A stretch of 64,000 nt of DNA, from assembly GCA_964106915.2 (NCBI GenBank), contig OZ066919.1; one strand, given 5' to 3'. Under the pieces are notes generated by a model, which worked only from the letters and a program-made list of their open reading frames with translations, was not told the DNA's origin and searched no databases. Within the stretch, counting starts at the first letter, position 1. Every line of letters starts with the position of its first letter. Below, in pieces: positions 1 to 59,374 of this stretch. The stretch is from Podarcis gaigeae. Taxonomy: Eukaryota. Made by a program: the position numbers and the translations under genes.

Positions 1-744
1 TTTGCAAGGTCTGCATCCATTTATGCTCCTCAATTGTTCTTTGTTGGACTATCCATTTTAAGTAGTCAATTCCTTTTAAAGAGTTTACCCCAGCACTACC
101 ATTGTCTTCTCAGGCAACCTGAAGTTCACTTGGATTTTTTGGTGGTGTTATTAAACTTGACTTCTGGCTTTAAACTAGGAATGAGGAACCTCTAGCTCTC
201 CAGTTCTTTTCTTTTTGAAAACAATTCCCTCCATACTTGAACAATCTGGTTGGAACATACATGTGTTGGAGTTGTATCTTCTGAACACCTTGTTTTTATG
301 GTTGTAAGTTGTTACAGATTATTTTTAATGGTTTTTTTTAAAATCTGTAACCTGTCCTGGGACCTGAAGCTGAAGGTGGATAAAAATAATAAAACGAAAA
401 ATGAAAACTAAGATTGGAAGATCTGCCCCCTGCCCTAAGTCCAACACACCACCCACCAGCAACAGGTTAAGTCATCGAAGTCACCAAGAAGTAAAGTGGC
501 AGAATACTCTACCTTGGAAATTATCTGGTATTATCTACCTGTACATCTTCAGATGTTGCTATTTGGAGATGCGGATGTCCTTGGGCAACATGGTCTCAGC
601 AGGCCTCTGTCTCTGAATGGACACCCTTCTTCTCACTACTGTTGTCTCTCTTGGCTTGCTCACTCTGAGAGGGCAGCTGAACAGTTGGCAGTAGCACAGA
701 GGATGGGCAGCCAGGCCAGAATGCTTCAGGGAATGGCAGTAGGC

Positions 745-877
745 TAAGGGAACCAGATTTTTTTCAGTGAATCCAGGGACACTTTTCAACTTCCTATTAA
801 ATAGATGGATTTTGTCAGGGGACTGATTCGTAAATATGGGGACTGTCCCCGGGAAACGGGGACATCTGGTAACCTTG
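745..877. mobile_element. hAT (Blackjack-like) MITE
   Basis: Termini taagggaaccaga...tctggtaaccttg are imperfect TIRs; internal gggac motifs; exact 8-bp TSD cagtaggc at 737-744 and 878-885. Confidence 0.75.
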
Positions 878-1750
878 CAGTAGGCTCCTTCTTGGGATGT
901 GGACCTCCACAGTTCCCCAGTGATGTCAAACTCTGGCACCACACTTCCCTTCAGAAAAAATACATTAGCATGGTCTGTATTGTTGGCACTCGCTTTAGAT
1001 TATTAAGGCAAGGTTTAATGAGCTGGCCTTTGCAACCTATTTGCACAGTGGAGGTTTTTTCCTTTCCCTGCACAGGAAAAGAAAACTTTGTTAGGACATC
1101 ACAGGTCCTGAAGATGAATGAGCAGCAAGCATGATATTTGATTCCCACACAGACACTTCTTTTGATGCTGCTAATTCTCTGAATAAAAAGTGATCTTGTT
1201 CTCCCCTCATCTCATTTAGTAGCCTGCTCATCTAACTAGAAAGAGGAAGAGAAGGATTCCTTAGCACTCCAGAAGCCTGAGAACTTTTCTTCTTCACTCA
1301 AGTCTGGCAACTTGTTGAGCGGGTCAGCATTTTTTTTGTGGGTGTCACAGTTTTCCGAAATGTCAGAAGTAACTGCTCAGCTTATGGGCTAATTTCAGCA
1401 GCTTCTCAATTCGCTTTGAGTTGATGGATGATTTCAATAGCATGGCGTTAGCTAAGTACTTTGTGGAGTTCAGAACTAATTCTAAGAAAACATTTTAAGA
1501 TAGATTTCCATATCATTGCCAGTTCCCTAGCTTCACTCCCAGACATGCAGTTGCCTATGAGCTTATAACTTGTGCATGTGGTTATCATTTTTTTGTTGAA
1601 TCATAACCCAAACTGCAGTAAACAAGGGCAGTTGAAAAAGGCAAGTAAAAATATGATTCCTGGTCTTCAAAATTATTAGAGAGAAGGGGGTGAAAATTAA
1701 AGGGGAGATAGGTGGAAACCTTTAAAAATAGAATTCATATAAATTACATT

Positions 1751-1860
1751 GCAGGGCTGGTGTCCTCCAGATGCAATGGACTACAACTCCCATCAGCCTC
1801 AGCAAGCATGCTCATTGGTCAGGGATGATAGGAATTGTAGTCAGGTACCACATTGGCTGC
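1751..1860. mobile_element. degenerate palindromic hAT-type MITE (ctacaactcccatc family)
   Basis: ctccagatg...gactacaactcccatc...gggatgataggaattgtagtc inverted arms; same family as 4310 and 53879. Confidence 0.55.
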
Positions 1861-3070
1861 TCTTATATTGGCAATATAACTGTGCAAGGAAACGTGTTTT
1901 CTCACGTTATTTTTATGACCTAGCAAAGGAAAAGGATAGCCCCAATAGTAAAAAAAATCACAATCTTGTTTCTGTGCTACTTTGAGCATCTTCTCAATTC
2001 TCAGTGAATAGTGAATTTCTCCATTGACTCTATTTTTATGTAGCTGTTTGGTTCTTCTTTCATTACGGTGAAAACACAGTGGAAGGTAAGATGTGTCACA
2101 CATTAAATCCTGGACACGTAGCCCCTGTAAACTGGCTGACTTTGTCAAAGCTCTGCAAACCATATATAGCCTCCTCCGGACTCTTCAGAGGAAGACACCA
2201 GTAAAGCCAATAATATTGGGTGATACCCAGTGCTGCTCATACTCAGAGTAGACTCGGTTGGATATCACCCACCAACTCAAAAAAGCGAATAAGGATTAGT
2301 TACAAAATGACAGTAATGCTATTCAGTCTTGATTCAGCAAAGGTGATTTGTTTGTGTGCATATCTTATGCAAAATGATGTTATGCAAGGTCATCAGTAAT
2401 CAGAGTTGTGTGTAAACGGCCTCTTGGAATTCTCCACCTGATTTTTGGGCAGAGGAATTACAAGTGGCAGCAGCAACAATTGTGTTGGCAGTCTGGCCAC
2501 AGTTTTGACCAGGTTGGCCACTGCTCAGTGGTCCTACCCAATGGTATCACTTTATCACCCTTCTCACTGGGCTCCTGGGGTCCCTTTTTAGCATGGGGTG
2601 GGGTGTGTGGAACCACTTTTGAATGGGAGTTGGCACTGGCCGACAACTATTTTAATTTACCAACAATGCAGTCCCAGGGCCCATAGATCTAGTCAATCTT
2701 GTTCAAAAGTGGCACTGCTCCCCCATCCATTGCTAAAGTCCCAGCTAGGAGGTCAGTAAGTGTTTGCTGCTGCTGCTGCTGCTGCTGCTGTCATCATGGT
2801 GGCAACAGAACAAAGCATGACCATAGGGGAATAAGGAGAGAGTGTTTGGTGTGCTTATTGTTGGAGGTGGGGGCGGTCAGGACAGGAGCTCTTTTCCCTA
2901 AGGCTAACTGTAGCACCACATGTGTGTATGTTGGTTTTTATTGGAAACACAGCTGGGAAGGCATAAATCTCCTAGCACCCTGTGCTTCTGCTGAAAACCA
3001 CCCCTCGCAAGACTAGAATTACATAAATTCATCCCCTGACACAGCGGAAATCTAGGCAATCATAATAATA

Positions 3071-3312
3071 CAGTGGTACCTTGGGTTACAGACGCTTCAG
3101 GTTACATATGCTTCAGGTTACAGACTCTGCTAACCCAGAAATAGTACCTCGGGTTAAGAACTTTGCTTCAGGATGAGAACAGAAATCATGCTCCAGCGGC
3201 ACGGCAGCAGCGGGAGGCCCCGTTAGCTAAAGTGGTACCTCAGGTTAAGAACAGTTTCAGGTTAAGAACGGACCTCCAGAACGAATTAAGTTCTTAACCC
3301 GAGGTACCACTG
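3071..3312 (+). mobile_element. Tc1/mariner-superfamily (Tigger/pogo-like) MITE
   Basis: TIRs cagtggtacct...aggtaccactg flanked by TA on both sides; near-identical copies at 41308 and 59375. Confidence 0.85.
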
Positions 3313-4309
3313 TATGTTGTTTCAGGGTTATGTATGGAAAACAGCAATGGACCTAGACAAAACTCAGGGAATTGCATTTACTCCGTGTTGATTGCCCTTC
3401 CCCACCCACTTCCTGGCCACATCTTAACTAAAGGAAATGCCTGATAGTATTTTTTCCTTTATGCGCAAAATCACATTTTTTCTGCTTCCTTGTTTTAGTT
3501 TCTTCAGGTTATAATTGGCAGCATGGTAGGACAAATGTCACTCGACATCAATTAATCCAAAACAAGGATCTAGCAAAGGTGATTTACCTATTAGAAATAT
3601 TCAACCATAGGGCAAAATGCAGAGAAGCCAAGTCCGTCTCTGCCCAGCAAAACACTGAACGCACCCAGGACCAATTCTGTTCTGTAGTTATTCTGTAAAC
3701 GTGTTAACAGATAATGTCACATATAGGTGTGTGGCAGTAAGTATGAATTACTAGTTGATTAAAAACATGTGTGCCGAATCTCTCTCTCAAATGGGCCTAG
3801 TATACTAGTAGAGACTTGTGCATTTTCTGGATGTGATAATCGCTGATTCTAAAGGCTACTGTCTATTTTGATTGAGTAAGTGTGCTTTTCAAATGCTGTG
3901 AAAATAAAATAAAAGTCTATGCAAAAGTTGGTTTCTCTTGCTTCATCTCAACAACCATTACTTGGGTTTTTGATCTGTTGCTCCTCACCAGTTTGGACAC
4001 TATGAATTCTAGGCACTGATAGAAAACTCAGGTTGCATGAGTTAGGACACTTGGCTGGCAAAGCAGCAATACAATTAAAGCATCAAATTGCATGGAACAT
4101 GTAAAGTCTATCACAGCAAGCAAGTCTCTAGAATCGCAGTGACTCCAAGCCAACCAGAGGCAACCAAAGAAATGTGCAGGTAATAACACTAAACTGCTGG
4201 AGGTCAGTTAAATTGCTCTAGCAAACGGTGCTTCCTTCTCAAGCCACTGATAGAGAACATGAGCAACTAACAAGCATTGGATAGGATAAGAACATTAGTT
4301 GTCCTACAT

Positions 4310-4438
4310 TAGGGTTTCCCAAACTTGGGTCTCCAGCTATTGTTGGGCTACAACTCCCATCATCCCTACGTACCAGGACCAATTGACAGGGATGATGGGA
4401 GTTGTAGTCTAAAAACAGCTGGAGACTCAAGTTTGGGA
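4310..4438. mobile_element. palindromic hAT-type MITE running into an assembly gap
   Basis: tcccaaacttgggtctccagct...agctggagactcaagtttggga near-perfect inverted repeat. Confidence 0.7.
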
Positions 4439-4932
4439 NNNNNNNNNNNNNNNNNNNNNNNNNNNNNNNNNNNNNNNNNNNNNNNNNNNNNNNNNNNNNN
4501 NNNNNNNNNNNNNNNNNNNNNNNNNNNNNNNNNNNNNNNNNNNNNNNNNNNNNNNNNNNNNNNNNNNNNNNNNNNNNNNNNNNNNNNNNNNNNNNNNNNN
4601 NNNNNNNNNNNNNNNNNNNNNNNNNNNNNNNNNNNNNNNNNNNNNNNNNNNNNNNNNNNNNNNNNNNNNNNNNNNNNNNNNNNNNNNNNNNNNNNNNNNN
4701 NNNNNNNNNNNNNNNNNNNNNNNNNNNNNNNNNNNNNNNNNNNNNNNNNNNNNNNNNNNNNNNNNNNNNNNNNNNNNNNNNNNNNNNNNNNNNNNNNNNN
4801 NNNNNNNNNNNNNNNNNNNNNNNNNNNNNNNNNNNNNNNNNNNNNNNNNNNNNNNNNNNNNNNNNNNNNNNNNNNNNNNNNNNNNNNNNNNNNNNNNNNN
4901 NNNNNNNNNNNNNNNNNNNNNNNNNNNNNNNN
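4439..4932. other. assembly gap (N run)
   Basis: Ns in sequence. Confidence 1.
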
Positions 4933-5508
4933 TCTCTCTGAGCAGTTTATGCACAGCCCCCAGGCTCCTATACTTTCCCTATCTCTCCTCCATAAAGGCT
5001 TTGACGATGATATCAGAACTGGCACTTTCATTTTTAATCAATCATAGTTTTAACATTACATCCAATTAATAAACTGCGAGTAATCTGCATCACAGTTTAT
5101 TGATGCAAACAGTCTGAATGATTTGAAGTAGGTTTGCCCATAGTTAGGCTCATCACAGCTCGTTTAGGTTTGGACATCCTGCTAAACTATGTTTCGCTAA
5201 AAAGTGAAAGTTTCTGATCTCCTTGCAGCCATGGTAGAGAAGGAAAGGGAAGAGGGAAGAGCATGAGTCCAAGGTTTGTTCATGGGATGATAAGCCATAG
5301 CACACATTGAAGGGGGCCTACAGTGGACCACCAGGAAAATGATTTGTAGTATTCCATTGCATGTGCCTATTTTTTACAAAACAAAACAAAACTGATGATT
5401 TTATTTGCTAGTAAGAAAAGTAGCTTAGCAAATATCAGGTAGCCTGAGTTGTGTGATTGCCCTCCAGACAGACAGGATTGTACTCTATGATTTGATCCTG
5501 GTCTGCAA

Positions 5509-5901
5509 AAAGAAAAAAAGGGGGGGGGGGTAAATGACTCCTGCATGGTTAAGTCTAGTCAATGGCAATTATGGGGTTGCAGCACTCATGTCGCTTCAGG
5601 CCGAGGGAGCCGGTGTTTATCCACAGACAGGTTTTCCAGATCATGTGGTCAGCATGACTAAACCACTTCTGGTGCAACGGGACACCATGACGGAAGTCAG
5701 AGTGCATGGAAATGTCATTTACCTTCCCACCACAGTGGTACCTTTTTATTTACTTGCTCTAGTGTGCTTTCAAACTGCTAGGTTGGCAGAAGCTGGGAAA
5801 GAGCAATGGGAGCTCATTCCGTCGTGGGGATTCTACCTTCCGATCGGCAAGCCCAAGAGGCTCAATGGTTTAGACCACAGCAGCACCTGTTCCCTCCATG
5901 C
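5509..5901 (-). mobile_element. Sauria SINE (Squam1)
   Basis: Reverse complement of the Sauria SINE body (gcttcaggccgagggagccgg, aaactgctaggttggcag, tRNA-like head near 5890); flanked by a 27-bp direct repeat at 5482-5508 and 5902-5928. Confidence 0.85.
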
Positions 5902-6139
5902 ACTCTATGATTTGGTCCTGGTCTGCAATAGTGGTCTAGAGGACAGGCTCAAACCATAGTTTGCCAGTTCAGATGTGATGGAAACAATGGTTTGAACTTA
6001 GGAGGAAGTGACTTATTAGAACTGAGCAGGCAATGAAAGAAGGGAGGCAAGGAAGGGGGTGGGAGATGTGAGCCTAGAGCACATTTTCAGTCTGCCAGAC
6101 CTTGGATGTGGTGTGGAGGTCAGGAACGGTACATCTTTT

Positions 6140-6272
6140 AGACTTTTAGAAGACATCTGAAGGCAGCCCTGTTTAGCTTTTAATGTTTGATGCATTACTG
6201 TATTTTAAAATTTTGTTGGAAGCCGCCCAGAGTGGTTGGAGAGGCCCGGCCAGGTGGGGGGGGGTTAATAAA

Positions 6273-6320
<48 letters not shown>

Positions 6321-6338
6321 CATTATTATTATTATTAT
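6140..6338 (+). mobile_element. L2 LINE 3' end with (ATT)n tail
   Basis: agacatctgaaggcagccctgtttag...gaagccgcccagagtgg...(att)n, matching the longer L2 at 17953. Confidence 0.75.
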
Positions 6339-7124
6339 CTGGGTTCAAACTGCCAATTAGTGCTGCTCTTCAAATTAATTTCCTTTCAAATGAATAAAGG
6401 ACACAAGAAGTTCTTGGGATTTTTAATTTTTTAAAAAACCAAATGCCCAGACAGGCATTTAATGGAAACTTGCAGCAGAAGGCTCCTTTGTGGAGCAGCT
6501 GAACATACATATTACAGGGATTCTTGCGGCAGAGCAACTGGCAGCCAATGCAATACTTCCTTGTTGCTTCTGCCCTGCTCGAAAAACTGATACCCTTGTC
6601 TGTGCAATGATATTAATCAGATATGAATAGCGAAGGCATTTCATTTGCTATTGATCTACTCCTAATCAGAAATCAAAGTGAACCTTATCCCGTGACAAAG
6701 TGTAATTATCTATTTTGTTAATTACTATAATTATCTTCCCCACATTTATTTTGACAGCAGTGTCAGCAGCAGAAAACTATTTCCTCAAATTGCTTCATGC
6801 CAATTATGAATTACAAATTCATACAATTTTGACAAATGATTTTCGTACTCCATCTTTGCACAGGCTTGGGGGGGGGGGGAACACCCTCTTTGAAACAGTC
6901 ATCAAAATGTTTTTGTCCCTGGAAAATATGTGTTAGGAAAGGTCCTATTAAAATGGTTACATATACTGTGTATTAACAGGCCGGGTCGGGACGGAACGGG
7001 GGAATCCACATAAACTAAATATAAATTATCTCATGCTGAATATAAGCAAGTAGGAAGGATAAGGGAGGGGAGGTATTTAGGTAAGCTTTTAATATTTGAT
7101 GATTTATTGTATTTTAATATTGAC

Positions 7125-7346
7125 ATCTTTCCGCAGGGCCTGCAAGACAGAGCTGTTCCACCAGGCCTTTGGCCAAGGCACAGTCTGACAGTTGGTAATC
7201 CTCATAGAACTCTAGCCCAATGGTTGCTATTAATTTGATTTTGAATTGATTTTAGAATGAATTGATTTTAGAATGCTGTGTTACTTTTATTGTTGTTAGC
7301 CGCTCTGAGCCCGGCTTCGGCTGGGGAGGGCGGGATATAAATAATA

Positions 7347-7381
<35 letters not shown>

Positions 7382-7500
7382 ATTATTATTATTAATTATT
7401 ATTTTGCTGGACGCTACCCAGAGTGGCTGGGGAAACCCAGCCAGATGGGTGGGGTATAAATAATAATAATCATTATCATCATCATCATCGTCATCGTCAT
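7125..7500 (+). mobile_element. two adjacent L2-type 3' tails
   Basis: ttccgcagggcctgcaagacagagctgttcc...gttagccgctctgagccc...(att)n, followed by cccagagtggctggggaaacccagccagatggg...(atc)n. Confidence 0.65.
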
Positions 7501-7667
7501 CCACTGGTTATCCCCAACCTGCATATCTTTTCATGCTGTACTTCTAAGCATCTTGTAAGATGGCAGCATTGTTTTGCAGGAGATAAAACAGAAGTACTTT
7601 GGGGACGTCCTGGTCTTTACCTTTTGAAATATGGTAACCCTAGCTCAAAGTATGGCTAAATCTGAAT

Positions 7668-16554: not shown

Positions 16555-16758
16555 NNNNNNNNNNNNNNNNNNNNNNNNNNNNNNNNNNNNNNNNNNNNNN
16601 NNNNNNNNNNNNNNNNNNNNNNNNNNNNNNNNNNNNNNNNNNNNNNNNNNNNNNNNNNNNNNNNNNNNNNNNNNNNNNNNNNNNNNNNNNNNNNNNNNNN
16701 NNNNNNNNNNNNNNNNNNNNNNNNNNNNNNNNNNNNNNNNNNNNNNNNNNNNNNNNNN
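16555..16758. other. assembly gap (N run)
   Basis: Ns in sequence. Confidence 1.
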
Positions 16759-18409: not shown

Positions 18410-19389
18410 GATGGGTACTGTTAATAGTTTGACTTGGTGTAAAGGAACCCCCTATGCTGTTCCTCAAGCTAGCATGCTCAATGGAATTTGAAAGGTTATC
18501 ACAGGTATTTCTCAGTGAGTATCGACAGCTCCTCCTCCTGAGCTAGGATATGCTACACATGCTCAGGTGGGGGCTAGAGAAGCAGTCCCACGTTATAAAT
18601 AAACCAGTAAAAGAAAAAGCAAGAGTTTTGCAAATATCTTAGGGTGGAATAGTGTTGTGGGATTCCAAGGGGATGCTTTTTGCTTTTGTGGGAAAGTGAT
18701 GTTGCCTTACTGACCAGCACAATCTGATTGCGAAGGTAGATATTTGTAGACAGACAGATGTCACCCAAAATGCCACTCAACTCCAGTGCTGTTGCAAAGG
18801 AAAATCCACATAAGGACTGACTCTCAAACTCTCTACTACATGGAGAAGTGGGGAACCGTGCTCACAGGAAACAGTCCTCTTCAACGAAACATTGTGCGCA
18901 CTCCCTCATGATGTTTCTATGTGCTATGGGTTGATTTAGAATCATGACCACCCCGTCCTAAAAAGTAGATTTATAACCCTTACGCGGTGTCTGAGATAAG
19001 ACTGAAAACAGAATAGCAGAAATATTGAAGCATTGGATCATAATTGGCAAATAAAAAGAACACAAAGTCCTTTACATTTCTTTGACTCTCTTGTTGTCCG
19101 AGGGCATCTATCAAATTATTTCAAGGGCAGATTCAGGGTGGGATATCACCGAGAGACACCAAAAGAGGATGTACACTTTTCTTGAAGCAGCCTCTGTTTG
19201 TGCTTCCTGTGTAATTTCTGAAAAGGGAACTGGTGTGTAACTTCTCAATGGGAGAGAAACTTAAGCTCTGGGTGCCTTGTGGGGAAGAGGCATACATTTC
19301 CTCCCTCAAACATTAATCAGGAAGTGCATATTGTGGATGTATGCCTCTTTCCCACACTTCTGTTGCAGCTATTTATGGTACTTGCAATA

Positions 19390-20669
19390 CCGTATTTTTC
19401 GCCCCATAGGACGCACTTTTTCCCCTCCAAAAATGAAGGGGAAATGTGTGTGCGTCCTATGGGGCGAATGCAGGCTTTCGCTGAAGCCTGGAGAGCAAGA
19501 GGCATCGGTGCGCACCGACCCCTCTCGCTCTCCAGGCTTCAGGAAGCTGTCCGCAAGCCTTGCGCGCCCGGCAGGAGCTCCCGCCGAGCGCGCAAGGCTT
19601 GGGGCGGCAGCCTGTTGCCCGAAGCATAGGGAGCCCTCCGGAGGGCTCCCCGTGCTTCGGGCGAGTGTTTGCAAGCCTTGCGCGCCCGGCAGGAGCTCCC
19701 GCCAGGCGCGCGAGGCTTGGGGCGGCAGCCTGTTGCCCGAAGCACAGGGAGCCCTCCGGAGGGCTCCCCGTGCTTCGGGCGAGTGTCTGCAAGCCTTGCG
19801 CGCCCGGCAGGAGCTCCCGCCAGGCGCGCGAGGCTTGGGGCGGCAGCCTGTTGCCCGTAGCACGCGGAGCCCTCCGGAGGGTGCCCCGTGCTTCGGGCGA
19901 GTGTCTGCAACCCTGCGCGCCCGGCAGGAGCTCCCGCCGGCCGCGCAAGGCTTGGGGCGGCAGCCTGTTGCCCGAAGCACAGGGAGCCCTCCGGAGGGCT
20001 CCCCGTGCTTCGGGCGAGTGTCTGCAAGCCTTGCGCGCCCGGCAGGAGCTCCCGCCAGGCGCGCGAGGCTTGGGGCGGCAGCCTGTTGCCCGTAGCACGC
20101 GGAGCCCTCCGGAGGGTGCCCCGTGCTTCGGGCGAGTGTCTGCAACCCTGCGCGCCCGGCAGGAGCTCCCGCCGGCCGCGCAAGGCTTGGGGCGGCAGCC
20201 TGTTGCCCGAAGCACAGGGAGCCCTCCGGAGGGCTCCCCGTGCTTCGGGCGAGTGTCTGCAAGCCTTGCGCGCCCGGCAGGAGCTCCCGCCAGGCGCGCG
20301 AGGCTTGGGGCGGCAGCCTGTTGCCCGTAGCACGCGGAGCCCTCCGGAGGGTGCCCCGTGCTTCGGGCGAGTGTCTGCAACCCTGCGCGCCCGGCAGGAG
20401 CTCCCGCCGGCCGCGCAAGGCTTGAGGCGGCAGCCTGTTGCCCGAAGCACAGGGAGCCCTCCGGAGGGCTCCCCGTGCTTCGGGCGAGTGTCTGCAAGCC
20501 TTGCACACCCGGCAGGAGGGCTCCCCGTGCTTTGGGCGAGTGTCTGCAAGCCTTGCGCGCCCGGCAGCCGCGGCTGGAGGTGGGAAATAATTTTTTTTTA
20601 TTCATTCCCCACCCCAAAAAACGAGGTGCGTCCTATGGGCCGGTGCGTCCTATAGGACGAAAAATACGG
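19390..20669. mobile_element. Tc2/pogo-like (CCGTA-terminus) MITE containing a tandem array
   Basis: 27-bp TIRs ccgtatttttcgccccataggacgcac / gtgcgtcctataggacgaaaaatacgg (2 mismatches), TA on both sides, subterminal gtgcgtcctat repeats. Confidence 0.85.
19555..20567. repeat. GC-rich tandem satellite of 117-118-bp double-palindrome units with a 235-bp higher-order repeat
   Basis: Unit starts at 19555, 19673, 19791, 19909, 20026, 20144, 20261, 20379, 20496 (internally deleted) and 20548 (partial). Confidence 0.97.
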
Positions 20670-20945
20670 TATATAAAACTACTCTCAAGACAGTGACTTT
20701 TCTTTTTGTCGAAGAATGGGGAAAGTTTCAGGATGGCAATATTGATGGCTATCTGCCAACCAATGTCAGTGTCATTGTTTCCTTAAAGAGAGATGAGAAC
20801 TAGGTTAATAACATGCAAATAAACATGCAAATTACACTTGACCCTTTGCCTTACAACATGACCATACTATGTGTGTTAGTACTATAAGGCTGTTCTGGCC
20901 ACAAATGTTCTGGCCATAATATGCCACAGAAAGAAGAAAAGAAGA

Positions 20946-20992
<47 letters not shown>

Positions 20993-21012
20993 TTCATATA
21001 TATATATGAATG

Positions 21013-21262
21013 ATTTATTGATTTTTCAAAAATAACAAAAATTAAAAAACAAAACAATTCAAAAACACACACAAATCAAAACAAATTGACTTCCCTCTAG
21101 TTCCTTCCTTGGTTCCATTATTTATCAATATACTGCATGTCCATTGTTCAGTTTGAAACCTTATTTAAATTACTTATTATCCATTCATAACAAAATTACA
21201 AGTAGTTTTAAAACCCTGCTAATGTATTAACCTGTGTACAAGGCTTCTGTATATATGCATAA
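21013..21262 (-). mobile_element. possible L1/Tx1-type LINE 3' UTR
   Basis: tttattg (minus-strand AATAAA) next to a (TA)n run, an A-rich tract and gacttccc; resembles squamate L1 3' ends. Confidence 0.4.
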
Positions 21263-42732: not shown

Positions 42733-42880
42733 NNNNNNNNNNNNNNNNNNNNNNNNNNNNNNNNNNNNNNNNNNNNNNNNNNNNNNNNNNNNNNNNNNNN
42801 NNNNNNNNNNNNNNNNNNNNNNNNNNNNNNNNNNNNNNNNNNNNNNNNNNNNNNNNNNNNNNNNNNNNNNNNNNNNNNNN
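42733..42880. other. assembly gap (N run)
   Basis: Ns in sequence. Confidence 1.
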
Positions 42881-57000: not shown

Positions 57001-58208
57001 CATTCCCCTGCCATAAATTAAGGAAGGAGACGAAAGCCAGAAAATACCTCCGTCGCCCAAACTCCTTTTGCTGTTTTCTCCCACTCTTTTCCCTCCCTAT
57101 AATTCCTTTGCAACCCTTGGGAAAGCAGCGAGCGATAGCCAATAATAAAAACATCCAATTTGCATTTAACAGTGAGGGATTTGTGGTGGGTTGGTGGAGG
57201 AGTTCGGCAGAATAAAAACCGGCATGTGCATTTTAAAAAAACGATCCACTTTATTGTGCTTACCTATTTGCTCAGTTAGAGTGGCATGGTCAACAATCTT
57301 GGTGGCACCAAGATTGGTATGGAGATACAGAGCTTAAATATACCAATCTGAGAAACAATTTGCTTGTTATGTGCTTTCTGGGCTTTAGTTTCAGCAGCCA
57401 TAATTTATCTGCCGTGGAAACAAATGCCTCATAATGCAGAAAGAGTTACACATTTTAACCCCCTCTCCTCCACACTTGAGTATGGATATCTGCCTCAGCA
57501 TTTCATCTGGTACAAGGCCTCAGTGTAATGGCAGGCAACAGAGACCAATTCGGTACTGCCTTTCAGGGTCTTCAAGCATTTCCAGATGCTTCATCCTTTG
57601 TTGGGTGATGAGCCAACAGAAGCCTTGGATGAATTCATTTAATTCTCAAATGTCCCTGTTCCATAAAACCCTGCACCACCACCACCAGCAGCAGCATTGT
57701 GTCTTAGGCCCTCCTAGCCACTGCAAACCTGTGGCTCCTTCGAAACCAATCAGGCTCACAGCTCTCTGTAAGATACCACTTCACTTCACCTTCCTTTAAA
57801 GAAACAGAAGGCTTGATGGCCTCATTTTCACTGAGCTTCATCTGCAAGTGTCCTTCTCTTAGAGGGCTTGTGTCACTCATTTCAAAGTCCAGGGGTTGAG
57901 AGGTATAATGAGGAAGGGCTCGGAGACACTTTCGGCGGTCATCCTGTATGCTCCGAGGTCAAGTGTTTTCTTACACTCCTAGCATTTACCAAAAGTAAGT
58001 TGGAGCCGTGAGAGAGACAGCTGGGAATCTAACGGCCTTGTGAGTCCTGGTGGATAAATCTTGCCTTTGATCATATGCACTGACCTTGGTTGCAACAATA
58101 GTCAAGAACTCCCTAGCACCGGACGGAGCTGAGAATCTGTTGCTCCGAGCTTCCTGTTTTCATTCAGATGTGTACAAATTACCTCAACATGCCCTCCTCC
58201 CTCCCCAC

Positions 58209-58516
58209 NNNNNNNNNNNNNNNNNNNNNNNNNNNNNNNNNNNNNNNNNNNNNNNNNNNNNNNNNNNNNNNNNNNNNNNNNNNNNNNNNNNNNNNNNNNN
58301 NNNNNNNNNNNNNNNNNNNNNNNNNNNNNNNNNNNNNNNNNNNNNNNNNNNNNNNNNNNNNNNNNNNNNNNNNNNNNNNNNNNNNNNNNNNNNNNNNNNN
58401 NNNNNNNNNNNNNNNNNNNNNNNNNNNNNNNNNNNNNNNNNNNNNNNNNNNNNNNNNNNNNNNNNNNNNNNNNNNNNNNNNNNNNNNNNNNNNNNNNNNN
58501 NNNNNNNNNNNNNNNN
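58209..58516. other. assembly gap (N run)
   Basis: Ns in sequence. Confidence 1.
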
Positions 58517-59374
58517 AAGTTAACTGGTGCCAGCCTCACTCAGGGCTGCCTAATTGCAATTTAGCCTAGACAATTCCTCCCATTTTTGCCCTCCAGTAAT
58601 GGAACAACAGATCTCGGCCAGGTAAAGATTTTAAGGTGGAAGGGGGGAAAAACACAAGGCTGAGCGATGCACAAAAAACAACTGGACTCTTTCTTCTTCT
58701 TCTTTTTTTGAGACAGAGAAAATGCATGAGTTTAGAGCAACTTTCTCTTGACTGTGGTTTTTGTGTGACTGCTGGTAAGGCTCCTAGGAACAACAACAGC
58801 CTCATAATTTAAATTGGTCTTTGCTCCCCGTAGAGATTTCTTCAGTTATGCAATACAAAACATAAACACTCAGTATTATAAAGGGAAACTTCCTATGATA
58901 TTTAATTCATCAGTCTGGTAATGTTTCAAAATTGTTGCATTTTCTTTTTTAAGTTCAATTGTTTTATGGTTCAAGCAGGCTGTTTGTTGTTGTTGTTGTT
59001 GTTATCCTACTTAGCTTTGAAATAGCAATACTGTGATTTTCTCTATGAACATGTATTCTTAAGGATATTTCTCCCCCAGTGACCACCCTTCCACAGTAAG
59101 AGAACACACAATCTCATTTCTAGCATATATTAAGCCACAAGCTACCTTAAAATGCAAGTTCAGGCAGACAATCCACAGATAATTTGGTTCCCGATAAATT
59201 ATCTCATCCCAGTGCTTAGAATCTACATCAGTGGATTATCTCTTAATTTTTCCAGTAACAGCGGAAGATGATAGTCTAAAATTAAGACATTGAAGCTTTG
59301 AGTTTCAATAGTAGAAGGTGAGCCTCTCAAACAATGAAACTGTATATTTAAAAACTGGAACATAAGATCAGATA

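What the first reader, a model, noticed from the sequence alone, without database searches (positions are those of the whole stretch)
19390..20669. MITE whose interior has become a double-hairpin, higher-order GC-rich satellite
Seen: intact 27-bp CCGTA-type TIRs with TA flanks enclose a ~60-bp hairpin (19481-19542) followed by 8 full 117-118-bp units. Each unit consists of two near-perfect ~46-bp palindromes, centred on GAGCTC and TCCGGA. Units 3-8 alternate two variants, giving an essentially identical 235-bp dimer repeated three times (19791-20495). The ninth unit is deleted from hairpin 1 to hairpin 2 at a GGAG microhomology. CpGs are barely decayed, so the array is a ~1.1-kb CpG-dense island in AT-rich surroundings. 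Established: MITEs can seed satellites. Inference: this captures a recent transposon-to-satellite transition, including higher-order structure, inside a unit that could still be mobilised. It could carry CpG islands or cruciform DNA, or yield hairpin dsRNA and endo-siRNAs. In the first two units most stem mismatches are A.C on plus, i.e. G.U on minus, but transition bias alone could explain this.
Basis: partly seen in the sequence, partly recalled or inferred. Interest (0 to 1): 0.8.

Follow-up and report, generated by a model that had tools for sequence, protein, structure and literature searches.

The report
Satellite-carrying mobile element in wall lizard
This is a small cut-and-paste transposon that entered this site recently in one wall-lizard lineage, carrying a GC-rich tandem repeat of hairpin-forming units; the structure is real, but transposons of this kind are already known from frogs, clams and insects.

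Summary
At 19390-20669 lies a 1,280-bp non-coding element with 27-bp terminal inverted repeats (25/27) and TA on both sides. Inside are eight 117/118-bp units, each made of two near-perfect palindromes. Units 3-8 form a 235-bp dimer repeated three times with 0-1 differences. Two end units were cut down by microhomology deletions. CpG o/e is 0.83, against 0.28-0.48 in the flanks.

Contigs of public runs add three facts:
- Three related organisms carry the exact empty site with a single TA. An independent sample of the window's own organism carries both junctions without a difference. The element therefore inserted as one piece, recently.
- Hundreds of contigs with unlike flanks end exactly at the TA, so this is a mobile family.
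- The 118-bp unit is multi-copy and tandem at other loci, also in the species that lack this insertion.

The array is therefore inherited cargo of a tandem-repeat-bearing MITE sub-family, not a satellite born at this locus. Only the 235-bp higher-order repeat looks local.

The closest known case is miDNA4 of Xenopus, so this is a new member of a known kind. The number of units could not be confirmed, because only short-read contigs were available. I found no evidence of expression or function.

The parts
19388..19389 (.). TA target-site duplication, left copy
   Evidence: The empty-site contigs in X4, X8 and X15 join 19387 to 20670 with 2 shared bases (table 5).
19390..19416 (+). 5' terminal inverted repeat, 27 bp, starting CCGTA
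   Evidence: exact match here, a match with 2 mismatches on the minus strand at 20643-20669, and 0 expected by chance. Many contigs with unlike flanks end at 19387/19388 (table 7).
19398..19468 (+). 5' sub-terminal hairpin: the inner part of the TIR (motif CCCATAGGACGCAC, 19403-19416) repeated in inverted orientation at 19450-19463. It lies in the very abundant 5' module, 19390 to about 19560.
   Evidence: four motif copies in the element, 0.04 expected; fold. table 2: summed depth of 2.7-5.2 x 10^5 against 11.8 in the single-copy flank in X3.
19474..19547 (+). Stand-alone hairpin H0 (near-perfect stem 19481-19542), not similar in sequence to the unit palindromes
   Evidence: It is shared with the abundant family; depth falls only after about 19560-19578 (tables 2 and 3).
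19548..20488 (+). Array of eight full 117/118-bp units, each being palindrome H1 (centre GAGCTC), a linker, then palindrome H2 (centre TCCGGA)
19784..20488 (+). Higher-order repeat: a 235-bp dimer x 3 with 0-1 differences. Variant A has a good H1 and a degraded H2; variant B has a degraded H1 and a good H2.
   Evidence: The variant A base T at 19858 is A in essentially all laid contigs of three organisms (table 3).
20489..20540 (+). Unit 9, 52 bp: a 66-bp internal deletion from the H1 left arm to the H2 right arm across a shared GGAG, plus three CpG-decay substitutions
20541..20567 (+). Unit 10, first 27 nt only. It is joined at a shared GGCAG (unit positions 23 and 59) to the family's 3' junction sequence.
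   Evidence: Another copy in X4 shows the undeleted junction, linker followed by GCGGCTGG (table 5c).
20568..20642 (+). 3' module: an A/T-rich tail, with a second, direct copy of the sub-terminal motif at 20626-20639 (minus strand)
   Evidence: Depth of about 6 x 10^4 in X3 from about 20590 onward.
20643..20669 (-). 3' terminal inverted repeat
   Evidence: Contigs with unlike flanks end at 20671 (table 7).
20670..20671 (.). TA target-site duplication, right copy

Best explanation
The element is one copy of a tandem-repeat-bearing sub-family of a very abundant TA-targeting (Tc1/mariner-pogo-type) non-autonomous DNA transposon of wall lizards.

Shown:
- It was cut and pasted as a single 1,280-bp piece into a TA. 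This happened after organism A separated from organisms B, E and G, whose flanks differ from A's by 1.3-2.5%. It is present in two samples of A.
- The element encodes nothing.
- It carries four copies of a 14-nt motif at and just inside its ends.
- The 118-bp unit is multi-copy and tandem at other loci, also in species that lack this insertion.

Inferred:
- The four motif copies are the transposase-binding sites, and a transposase supplied in trans moved the element.
- The GC-rich array of 118-bp double-palindrome units was already in the source element when it inserted.
- Array length then changes locally. The palindromes stall or mislead replication, which gives unequal exchange or slippage (the 3 x 235-bp dimer) and microhomology deletions between palindrome arms (units 9 and 10).
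- The central units are homogenised while the edge units drift and lose CpGs.
- The high CpG content reflects youth, not a demonstrated function.
For: - TIRs and TA flanks.
- Exact empty site: contigs of X4 (organism B) and X8 (organism E) have 255 nt on the shorter side of the joint, and X15 (organism G) has 28 nt. All skip 1,282 bases with 2 shared bases (table 5).
- X3, a different sample and study of organism A, has contigs running flank-into-TIR on both sides with 0 differences (records 9 and 15).
- In each DNA run, about 130-145 contigs with unlike AT-rich flanks end at 19387/19388 and 44-73 at 20671-20674 (table 7). These are many independent insertions next to TA.
- Array bins have summed depth in the hundreds to 10^4, against 10.7-68 for single copy, in X3, X4 and X8. 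The laid pieces are 90-95% alike (tables 2 and 8).
- Tandem junctions at other loci: X3 record 13, and back-joints in X4 and X8 (tables 5c and 8).
- Earlier first-stage notes report the same 118-bp two-hairpin units inside transposons elsewhere in this genome (unchecked leads).
- No Pfam domain in any in-element ORF.
- Four motif copies against 0.04 expected.
- Microhomology deletions at the array's 3' edge.
- Known precedent: Tc1/mariner MITE miDNA4 with a variable internal satellite in Xenopus (PMC12628747, PMC9659126), and palindromes proposed as hot spots of array-length change in DTC84 (PMC3879986).
Against: - No autonomous partner or transposase was seen, so the superfamily rests on the TA duplication alone.
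- The copy number of the array-bearing form is not measured. The tool warns that summed contig depth is not a copy number.
- No laid contig of the independent sample X3 shows the variant A base at 19858. The interior of the array, its eight units and its higher-order repeat are therefore confirmed by the assembly alone.
- Whether the dimer amplification happened before or after insertion is unknown.
- The role of the palindromes in slippage is inferred, not shown.
Confidence: 0.78

Rival explanations
1. One reading: the satellite arose here. An ordinary MITE's interior was tandemised at this locus, so the site is a snapshot of a transposon-to-satellite transition.
For: The 235-bp dimer is nearly identical in three copies. 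It is built on a variant (T at 19858 and its neighbours) seen in no other laid contig (table 3). At least the last amplification step is therefore local or specific to the source copy.
Against: The 118-bp unit is multi-copy and tandem in organisms B and E, which have the empty site here, and at another locus in A. Units 1, 2, A and B differ by 5-9%, more than the 1.3-2.5% flank divergence between the organisms. Unit diversity is therefore probably older than the insertion, though CpG-rich DNA mutates faster.
Confidence: 0.1
2. Assembly artefact: the array is real, but its length and the perfect three-fold dimer were produced by mis-assembly or consensus polishing of a shorter or different array.
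For: No read or contig spans the array, and no laid contig of X3 carries the variant A base. The three dimers are suspiciously identical. The window has gaps or masked runs elsewhere.
Against: A 1.1-kb array is easily spanned by the long reads of current lizard assemblies. Both junctions are confirmed in an independent sample. The edge units are diverged and the centre homogeneous, as in real arrays. The tool states that Logan contigs drop rare variants.
Confidence: 0.1
3. Functional cargo: the array acts as a dispersed CpG island or regulatory module, or is transcribed into hairpin RNA that feeds siRNA or piRNA silencing of the family.
For: CpG o/e of 0.83 at 74% GC, the only such stretch in 64 kb. 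Very stable hairpins on both strands. The minus-strand RNA fold is about 5% more stable.
Against: No holder is on record as RNA. The possibly-RNA run X15 shows the element ends but zero depth across the array. Stem changes in variants A and B are clustered and break pairs without compensation. Rfam gives only sub-threshold generic hairpin matches. The A.C bias is about three CpG-to-CpA events copied with the units.
Confidence: 0.07
4. Not one element: two separate MITE copies or fragments happen to flank a resident genomic satellite.
For: The 5' module is about 5-8 times deeper than the 3' module in contig depth, and the two ends share only the 27-bp TIR and the motif.
Against: The empty site in three organisms removes exactly TIR-to-TIR plus one TA, with nothing left behind. 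The whole 1,280 bp therefore arrived in one event.
Confidence: 0.01

Closest known systems
miDNA4, a Tc1/mariner MITE of Xenopus tropicalis carrying an internal satellite (Scalvenzi and Pollet 2014, as described in PMC12628747 and PMC9659126)
   Same: A vertebrate, TA-type non-autonomous DNA transposon. Its interior holds a satellite monomer present as one to many tandem copies. Microhomologies are invoked for internal deletions and expansions, and the array is spread by transposition.
   Different: No sequence relationship was tested. Here the unit is GC-rich (74%) and made of two 46-48-bp palindromes, and this copy has a 235-bp higher-order repeat. miDNA4's repeat is described as flanked by AT-rich direct repeats. 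Satellite arrays free of TIRs have not been shown here.
DTC84 / pearl-type tandem-repeat-containing MITEs of bivalves (PMC3879986)
   Same: The same modular build: flanking cassette with inverted repeats, then a core array of variable number. Diagnostic unit variants occur in a fixed order. A palindrome in each repeat is proposed as the hot spot for changes in array length.
   Different: DTC84 has up to five core repeats, an AA putative duplication, a microsatellite segment and only short inverted repeats. Here there is a TA duplication, 27-bp TIRs with sub-terminal motif copies, eight or more units and no microsatellite.
Xstir / Xmix MITE-derived tandem repeats of Xenopus laevis (Hikosaka and Kawahara 2004, as described in PMC12628747)
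   Same: A MITE, a tandem array and composite forms coexist, and stem-loop formation is invoked for tandemisation.
   Different: In Xstir the repeat unit derives from the MITE itself. Here the unit has no detectable similarity to the end modules or to hairpin H0.
Emigrant MITE / pogo-like Lemi1 of Arabidopsis (PMC1636448)
   Same: TA-type MITE with TIRs plus sub-terminal repeated motifs that the transposase binds. This is the model for the four motif copies here.
   Different: A plant element without an internal satellite. Binding here is inferred only.

Membership tests
Tc1/mariner (incl. pogo/Tc2) superfamily, non-autonomous member | Duplication of a TA target on insertion | tested here: met
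   TA on both sides. The empty site with a single TA is present in three related organisms (table 5).
Tc1/mariner (incl. pogo/Tc2) superfamily, non-autonomous member | Terminal inverted repeats | tested here: met
   27 bp, 25/27 identical, 0 expected by chance.
Tc1/mariner (incl. pogo/Tc2) superfamily, non-autonomous member | Termini shared with an autonomous element encoding a DD(E/D) transposase | not testable with these tools
   There is no transposase ORF in the window and no access to the rest of the genome, Dfam or Repbase. The resemblance of the first 13 bases to pogo-type termini is from memory only, a lead.
MITE | Non-coding | tested here: met
   The in-element ORFs are by-products of the GC-rich repeat and have no Pfam family.
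MITE | High copy number with precise common ends | tested here: met
   Hundreds of contigs with unlike flanks end exactly at the TA in each of three organisms. End-module depth is 10^3-10^4 times single copy; depth is only indicative.
MITE | Small size (usually under about 800 bp) | tested here: not met
   This copy is 1,280 bp. Without the array (19548 to about 20567) it would be about 260 bp. It is better called a tandem-repeat-containing MITE or non-autonomous transposon.
Tandem-repeat-containing MITE (miDNA4 / DTC84 kind) | Internal tandem array bounded by the element's end modules and moved with them | tested here: met
   Array at 19548-20567 inside the TIRs. The whole piece is absent at the empty site.
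Tandem-repeat-containing MITE (miDNA4 / DTC84 kind) | Unit number varies among copies of the family | tested here: inconclusive
   Contigs of other copies join units to the 3' module at various points and bridge unit-unit junctions (tables 5, 5c and 8). Short contigs cannot count units per copy.
Satellite DNA in the strict sense | Long arrays outside transposon boundaries | not tested
   One 1,836-nt contig of X4 has a unit at its end followed by unlike sequence (record 22), but nothing shows long free arrays.
hAT transposon (label used in earlier notes for 118-bp-unit carriers) | 8-bp target-site duplication | tested here: not met
   Only 2 bases are shared at the empty-site joint. The flanks are ...CAATA and TATAT..., with no 8-bp repeat.

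The most novel reading that the evidence does not exclude
The double-palindrome units could be more than passive cargo. One possibility is an amplification engine: cruciform or hairpin-driven slippage would let a still-active lizard MITE scatter kilobase CpG-dense, cruciform-prone islands through AT-rich DNA, seeding new unmethylated islands or fragile sites. Another is that they are Dicer or piRNA substrates that regulate the very abundant parent family. Unit abundance relative to single copy appears to differ between the three organisms (A > E > B, indicative only). That would fit ongoing, lineage-specific dynamics.
Probability: 0.1. Interest if true: 0.7.

Novelty: new member of a known kind. 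Interest (0 to 1): 0.35.

Why it matters
It is a clean vertebrate example, outside Xenopus, of a DNA transposon that carries and spreads a tandem repeat. The example has three parts: a dated insertion (present in one wall-lizard lineage, exact empty site in three relatives), intact ends, and a freshly homogenised higher-order repeat.

It suggests that a TA-type transposase was active recently in wall lizards. It also offers a presence/absence marker, and a tractable locus for studying how palindromic units change array length.

It does not open a new category. MITEs with internal satellites, and their role in seeding satellite DNA, are established (PMC12628747, PMC9659126, PMC3879986).

Tried and rejected
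- Other copies in the window: blastn of the four modules against the 64 kb found none.
- Exact scans of metagenome contigs and genome contigs for the H2 core and for the TIR found 0 hits. They give no sign of bacterial origin or contamination, but those collections hold no lizard DNA, so they say little.
- Rfam: nothing at gathering scores. The permissive scan gave only sub-threshold matches to many unrelated miRNA-precursor models, which reflects hairpin shape and not homology. No tRNA-like part was found, so there is no sign of a SINE origin.
- Common origin of H0, H1 and H2: local alignments were no better than shuffles.
- Strand-specific G.U wobble as a sign of a transcribed strand: rejected. 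The A.C mismatches are the same three CpG-to-CpA sites copied across units, and the minus-strand fold is only about 5% more stable.
- Two-MITEs-around-a-satellite reading: rejected by the exact empty site.
- The scan's own findings by sequence and by relatives were blank.
- Literature: no paper on this lacertid element was found. A 12-mer of the TIR matched only unrelated C. elegans primers.
- Gene context: the ten longest ORFs outside the element have no Pfam family above cut-off.

Full report
**What is in the sequence**

The stretch 19390-20669 is bounded by 27-bp inverted repeats that start with CCGTA and match at 25 of 27 positions. A search allowing 3 mismatches finds only these two sites in the 64 kb, and none in 100 shuffles. 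TA lies directly outside both ends.

From left to right the element contains:
- A 5' module in which the inner part of the TIR (14-nt motif CCCATAGGACGCAC) recurs in inverted orientation 33 nt further in. This forms a hairpin at 19398-19468.
- A second, unrelated hairpin, H0, at about 19474-19547.
- Eight full units of 117/118 bp (19548-20488).
- Two truncated units (20489-20540 and 20541-20567).
- An A/T-rich tail with another copy of the 14-nt motif directly beside the 3' TIR.

These parts are supported. The motif occurs four times in the element, against 0.04 expected.

**The array**

Tandem Repeats Finder reports period 118 (8.3 copies, 92% matches) and period 235 (4.1 copies, 97%). Units 3, 5 and 7 are identical. 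Units 4 and 6 are identical, and unit 8 differs from them by one base. The three 235-bp dimers therefore differ at 0-1 positions, while units 1 and 2 differ from all others by 5-9%.

Each unit carries a palindrome centred on GAGCTC (24-nt arms) and one centred on TCCGGA (23-nt arms). As single-stranded DNA the dimer folds with z = -9.4 and the left end with z = -12.4. H0, H1 and H2 are not similar to each other in sequence.
- Variant A (units 3, 5, 7) keeps a good H1 but has four mismatches in H2.
- Variant B (units 4, 6, 8) has a 1-bp deletion and four to five mismatches in H1 but keeps a good H2.
- The changes are clustered, with five substitutions within 26 bp in A. They include transversions and are not compensatory.

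Unit 9 is a 66-bp deletion between the H1 left arm and the H2 right arm across a shared GGAG. It also has three CpG-decay changes. Unit 10 stops after 27 nt at a GGCAG that recurs at unit position 59. Another copy of the family, seen in run X4, shows the undeleted junction (table 5c).

GC is 0.74 and CpG o/e 0.83, against CpG o/e 0.28 and 0.48 in the flanks. It is the only CpG-island-like stretch in the window.

**Evidence from related genomes**

The sequencing-run index lists holders in several coded organisms. Earlier follow-up notes on this genome call it a wall lizard. I laid the Logan contigs of four runs on 18900-21150.

1. Empty site. One contig each in X4 (organism B) and X8 (organism E) runs through both flanks and skips 19388-20669. 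That is 1,282 bases, or element plus one TA, with 2 shared bases at the joint and 255 nt on the shorter side. X15 (organism G) shows the same joint with a 28-nt side. Nothing is left behind at the joint, so these are unoccupied ancestral sites and not excision products.
2. Presence in A. X3 is organism A from a different sample and study than the best holder. It has contigs running from flank into TIR on both sides with no difference (records 9 and 15).
3. Timing. The flanks of B, E and G differ from the window by 10/758, 13/758 and 5/198 bases. The insertion is therefore younger than about 1.3% neutral divergence, unless lineage sorting is involved.
4. Mobile family. In each DNA run about 130-145 contigs end at 19387/19388 and 44-73 at 20671-20674. 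Their onward sequences agree with each other at only 0.35-0.41 and are AT-rich. These are many independent insertions next to TA.
5. Abundance. Summed contig depth is enormous over the 5' module and H0 (2.7-5.2 x 10^5 in X3, against 11.8 in the flank). It is about 6 x 10^4 over the 3' module, and in the hundreds to 1.5 x 10^4 over most array bins. The pattern is similar in X4 and X8. The tool warns that this is not a copy number, so I use it only for ranking: end modules far above array, array far above single copy.
6. Sub-family. Loose ends with mutually consistent sequence at 19476 and 19559 show that most family members continue with a different interior. The array-bearing form is therefore a sub-family.
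7. Units elsewhere. Array-type contigs are 90-95% alike to this copy and occur in B and E, which lack this insertion. X3 record 13 bridges a unit-to-unit junction of another copy. X4 and X8 show back-joints from the end of a unit to its start with other linker letters. The unit is therefore tandem at other loci too.
8. Private variant. At 19858 the window's T (variant A) is A in essentially all laid contigs of three organisms, so variant A is private to this copy or its source.

**Interpretation**

The element is a non-autonomous, TA-duplicating cut-and-paste transposon that inserted as one piece in the lineage of organism A. It encodes nothing, so it must have been moved in trans. The four motif copies at and inside the ends are the likely transposase-binding sites. 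This follows the pattern shown experimentally for the pogo-like Lemi1 protein on the Emigrant MITE (PMC1636448), and here it is an inference.

The array is family cargo that predates this insertion. What is local, or at least specific to the source copy, is the last amplification of a 235-bp dimer.

I take the palindromes to drive length change by slippage, unequal exchange and microhomology deletion between arms. The two truncated units are direct traces of such deletions. The same role was proposed for the palindrome in the DTC84 core repeat (PMC3879986). The array is homogeneous at its centre and diverged, CpG-decayed at its edges, which is the usual signature of exchange within arrays.

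**On the strand-bias remark**

The A.C mismatches in the stems are CpG-to-CpA changes at the same three sites, inherited by all units that carry them. They amount to about three events and carry no statistical weight. The minus-strand RNA fold is only about 5% more stable than the plus-strand fold.

**Comparison with known systems**

MITEs with internal tandem arrays are well described:
- miDNA4, a Tc1/mariner MITE with a variable internal satellite in Xenopus tropicalis.
- Xstir/Xmix in X. laevis.
- DTC84 and the pearl group in bivalves.
- DINE-1 and Tetris in Drosophila.

These are reviewed in PMC12628747, PMC9659126 and PMC3879986. The present element fits that kind. What stands out here is the GC-rich double-palindrome unit, the higher-order repeat and the dated, species-specific insertion.

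I found no paper on this element in lacertids. The Anolis DNA-transposon survey mentions Tc2-related non-autonomous families but no internal satellites (PMC3014272). The squamate SINE-satellite study concerns other repeats (PMC10702118). Dfam and Repbase could not be consulted.

**Limits**

- Only short-read contigs were available, so the number of units and the three-fold dimer rest on the assembly alone. No laid contig of the independent sample X3 carries the variant A base. The tool states that contigs drop rare variants, so this is neither support nor refutation.
- Superfamily assignment rests on the TA duplication. No transposase was seen.
- No holder is on record as RNA. The possibly-RNA run X15 covers the element ends but not the array. 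This does not prove silence.
- The N runs in the window were left alone.

**Verdict**

The element is a real, recently mobile transposon with a satellite-like interior, but the satellite was not born here. It is a new member of a known kind and of moderate interest.

Noticed in passing
window:19390-19560: The 5' module plus hairpin H0 belongs to an extremely abundant family. Summed contig depth is 10^4-fold above single copy in three organisms, and about 5-8 times above this element's own 3' module. Most members continue after 19476 or 19559 with a different, mutually consistent interior. The parent MITE family is therefore far larger than the array-bearing sub-family.
   Followed up: partly
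window:19584-20571 (array), runs X3, X4, X8: Array depth relative to single-copy depth appears to differ between organisms: up to about 1,300x in A, about 760x in E and about 130x in B. This hints at lineage-specific expansion of the unit. Depth is only indicative.
   Followed up: no
window:20951-21007: A (TA)n microsatellite of about 28 copies. Contigs of all runs break there (depth near 0 and 'reads seem cut there').
   Followed up: no
window:21028-21150: Another repeated element starts here. Depth is 400-7,600 against 10-70 in the flank, and it begins with a degenerate 16-bp A-rich repeat. It was not identified.
   Followed up: no
window:4439-4932, 16555-16758, 42733-42880, 58209-58516: Four runs of N (148-494 bases). 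The long two-strand ORFs listed at 4325-5047 and 58086-58569 are artefacts of these runs.
   Followed up: no
window:19394-19475: The 5' hairpin gives the best, though far sub-threshold, Rfam match: mir-651, 34.8 bits against a gathering score of 106, E = 5.7e-05. This is taken as generic hairpin shape. MITE ends are a known source of miRNA-like hairpins (own knowledge), so it could be looked at in small-RNA data.
   Followed up: no
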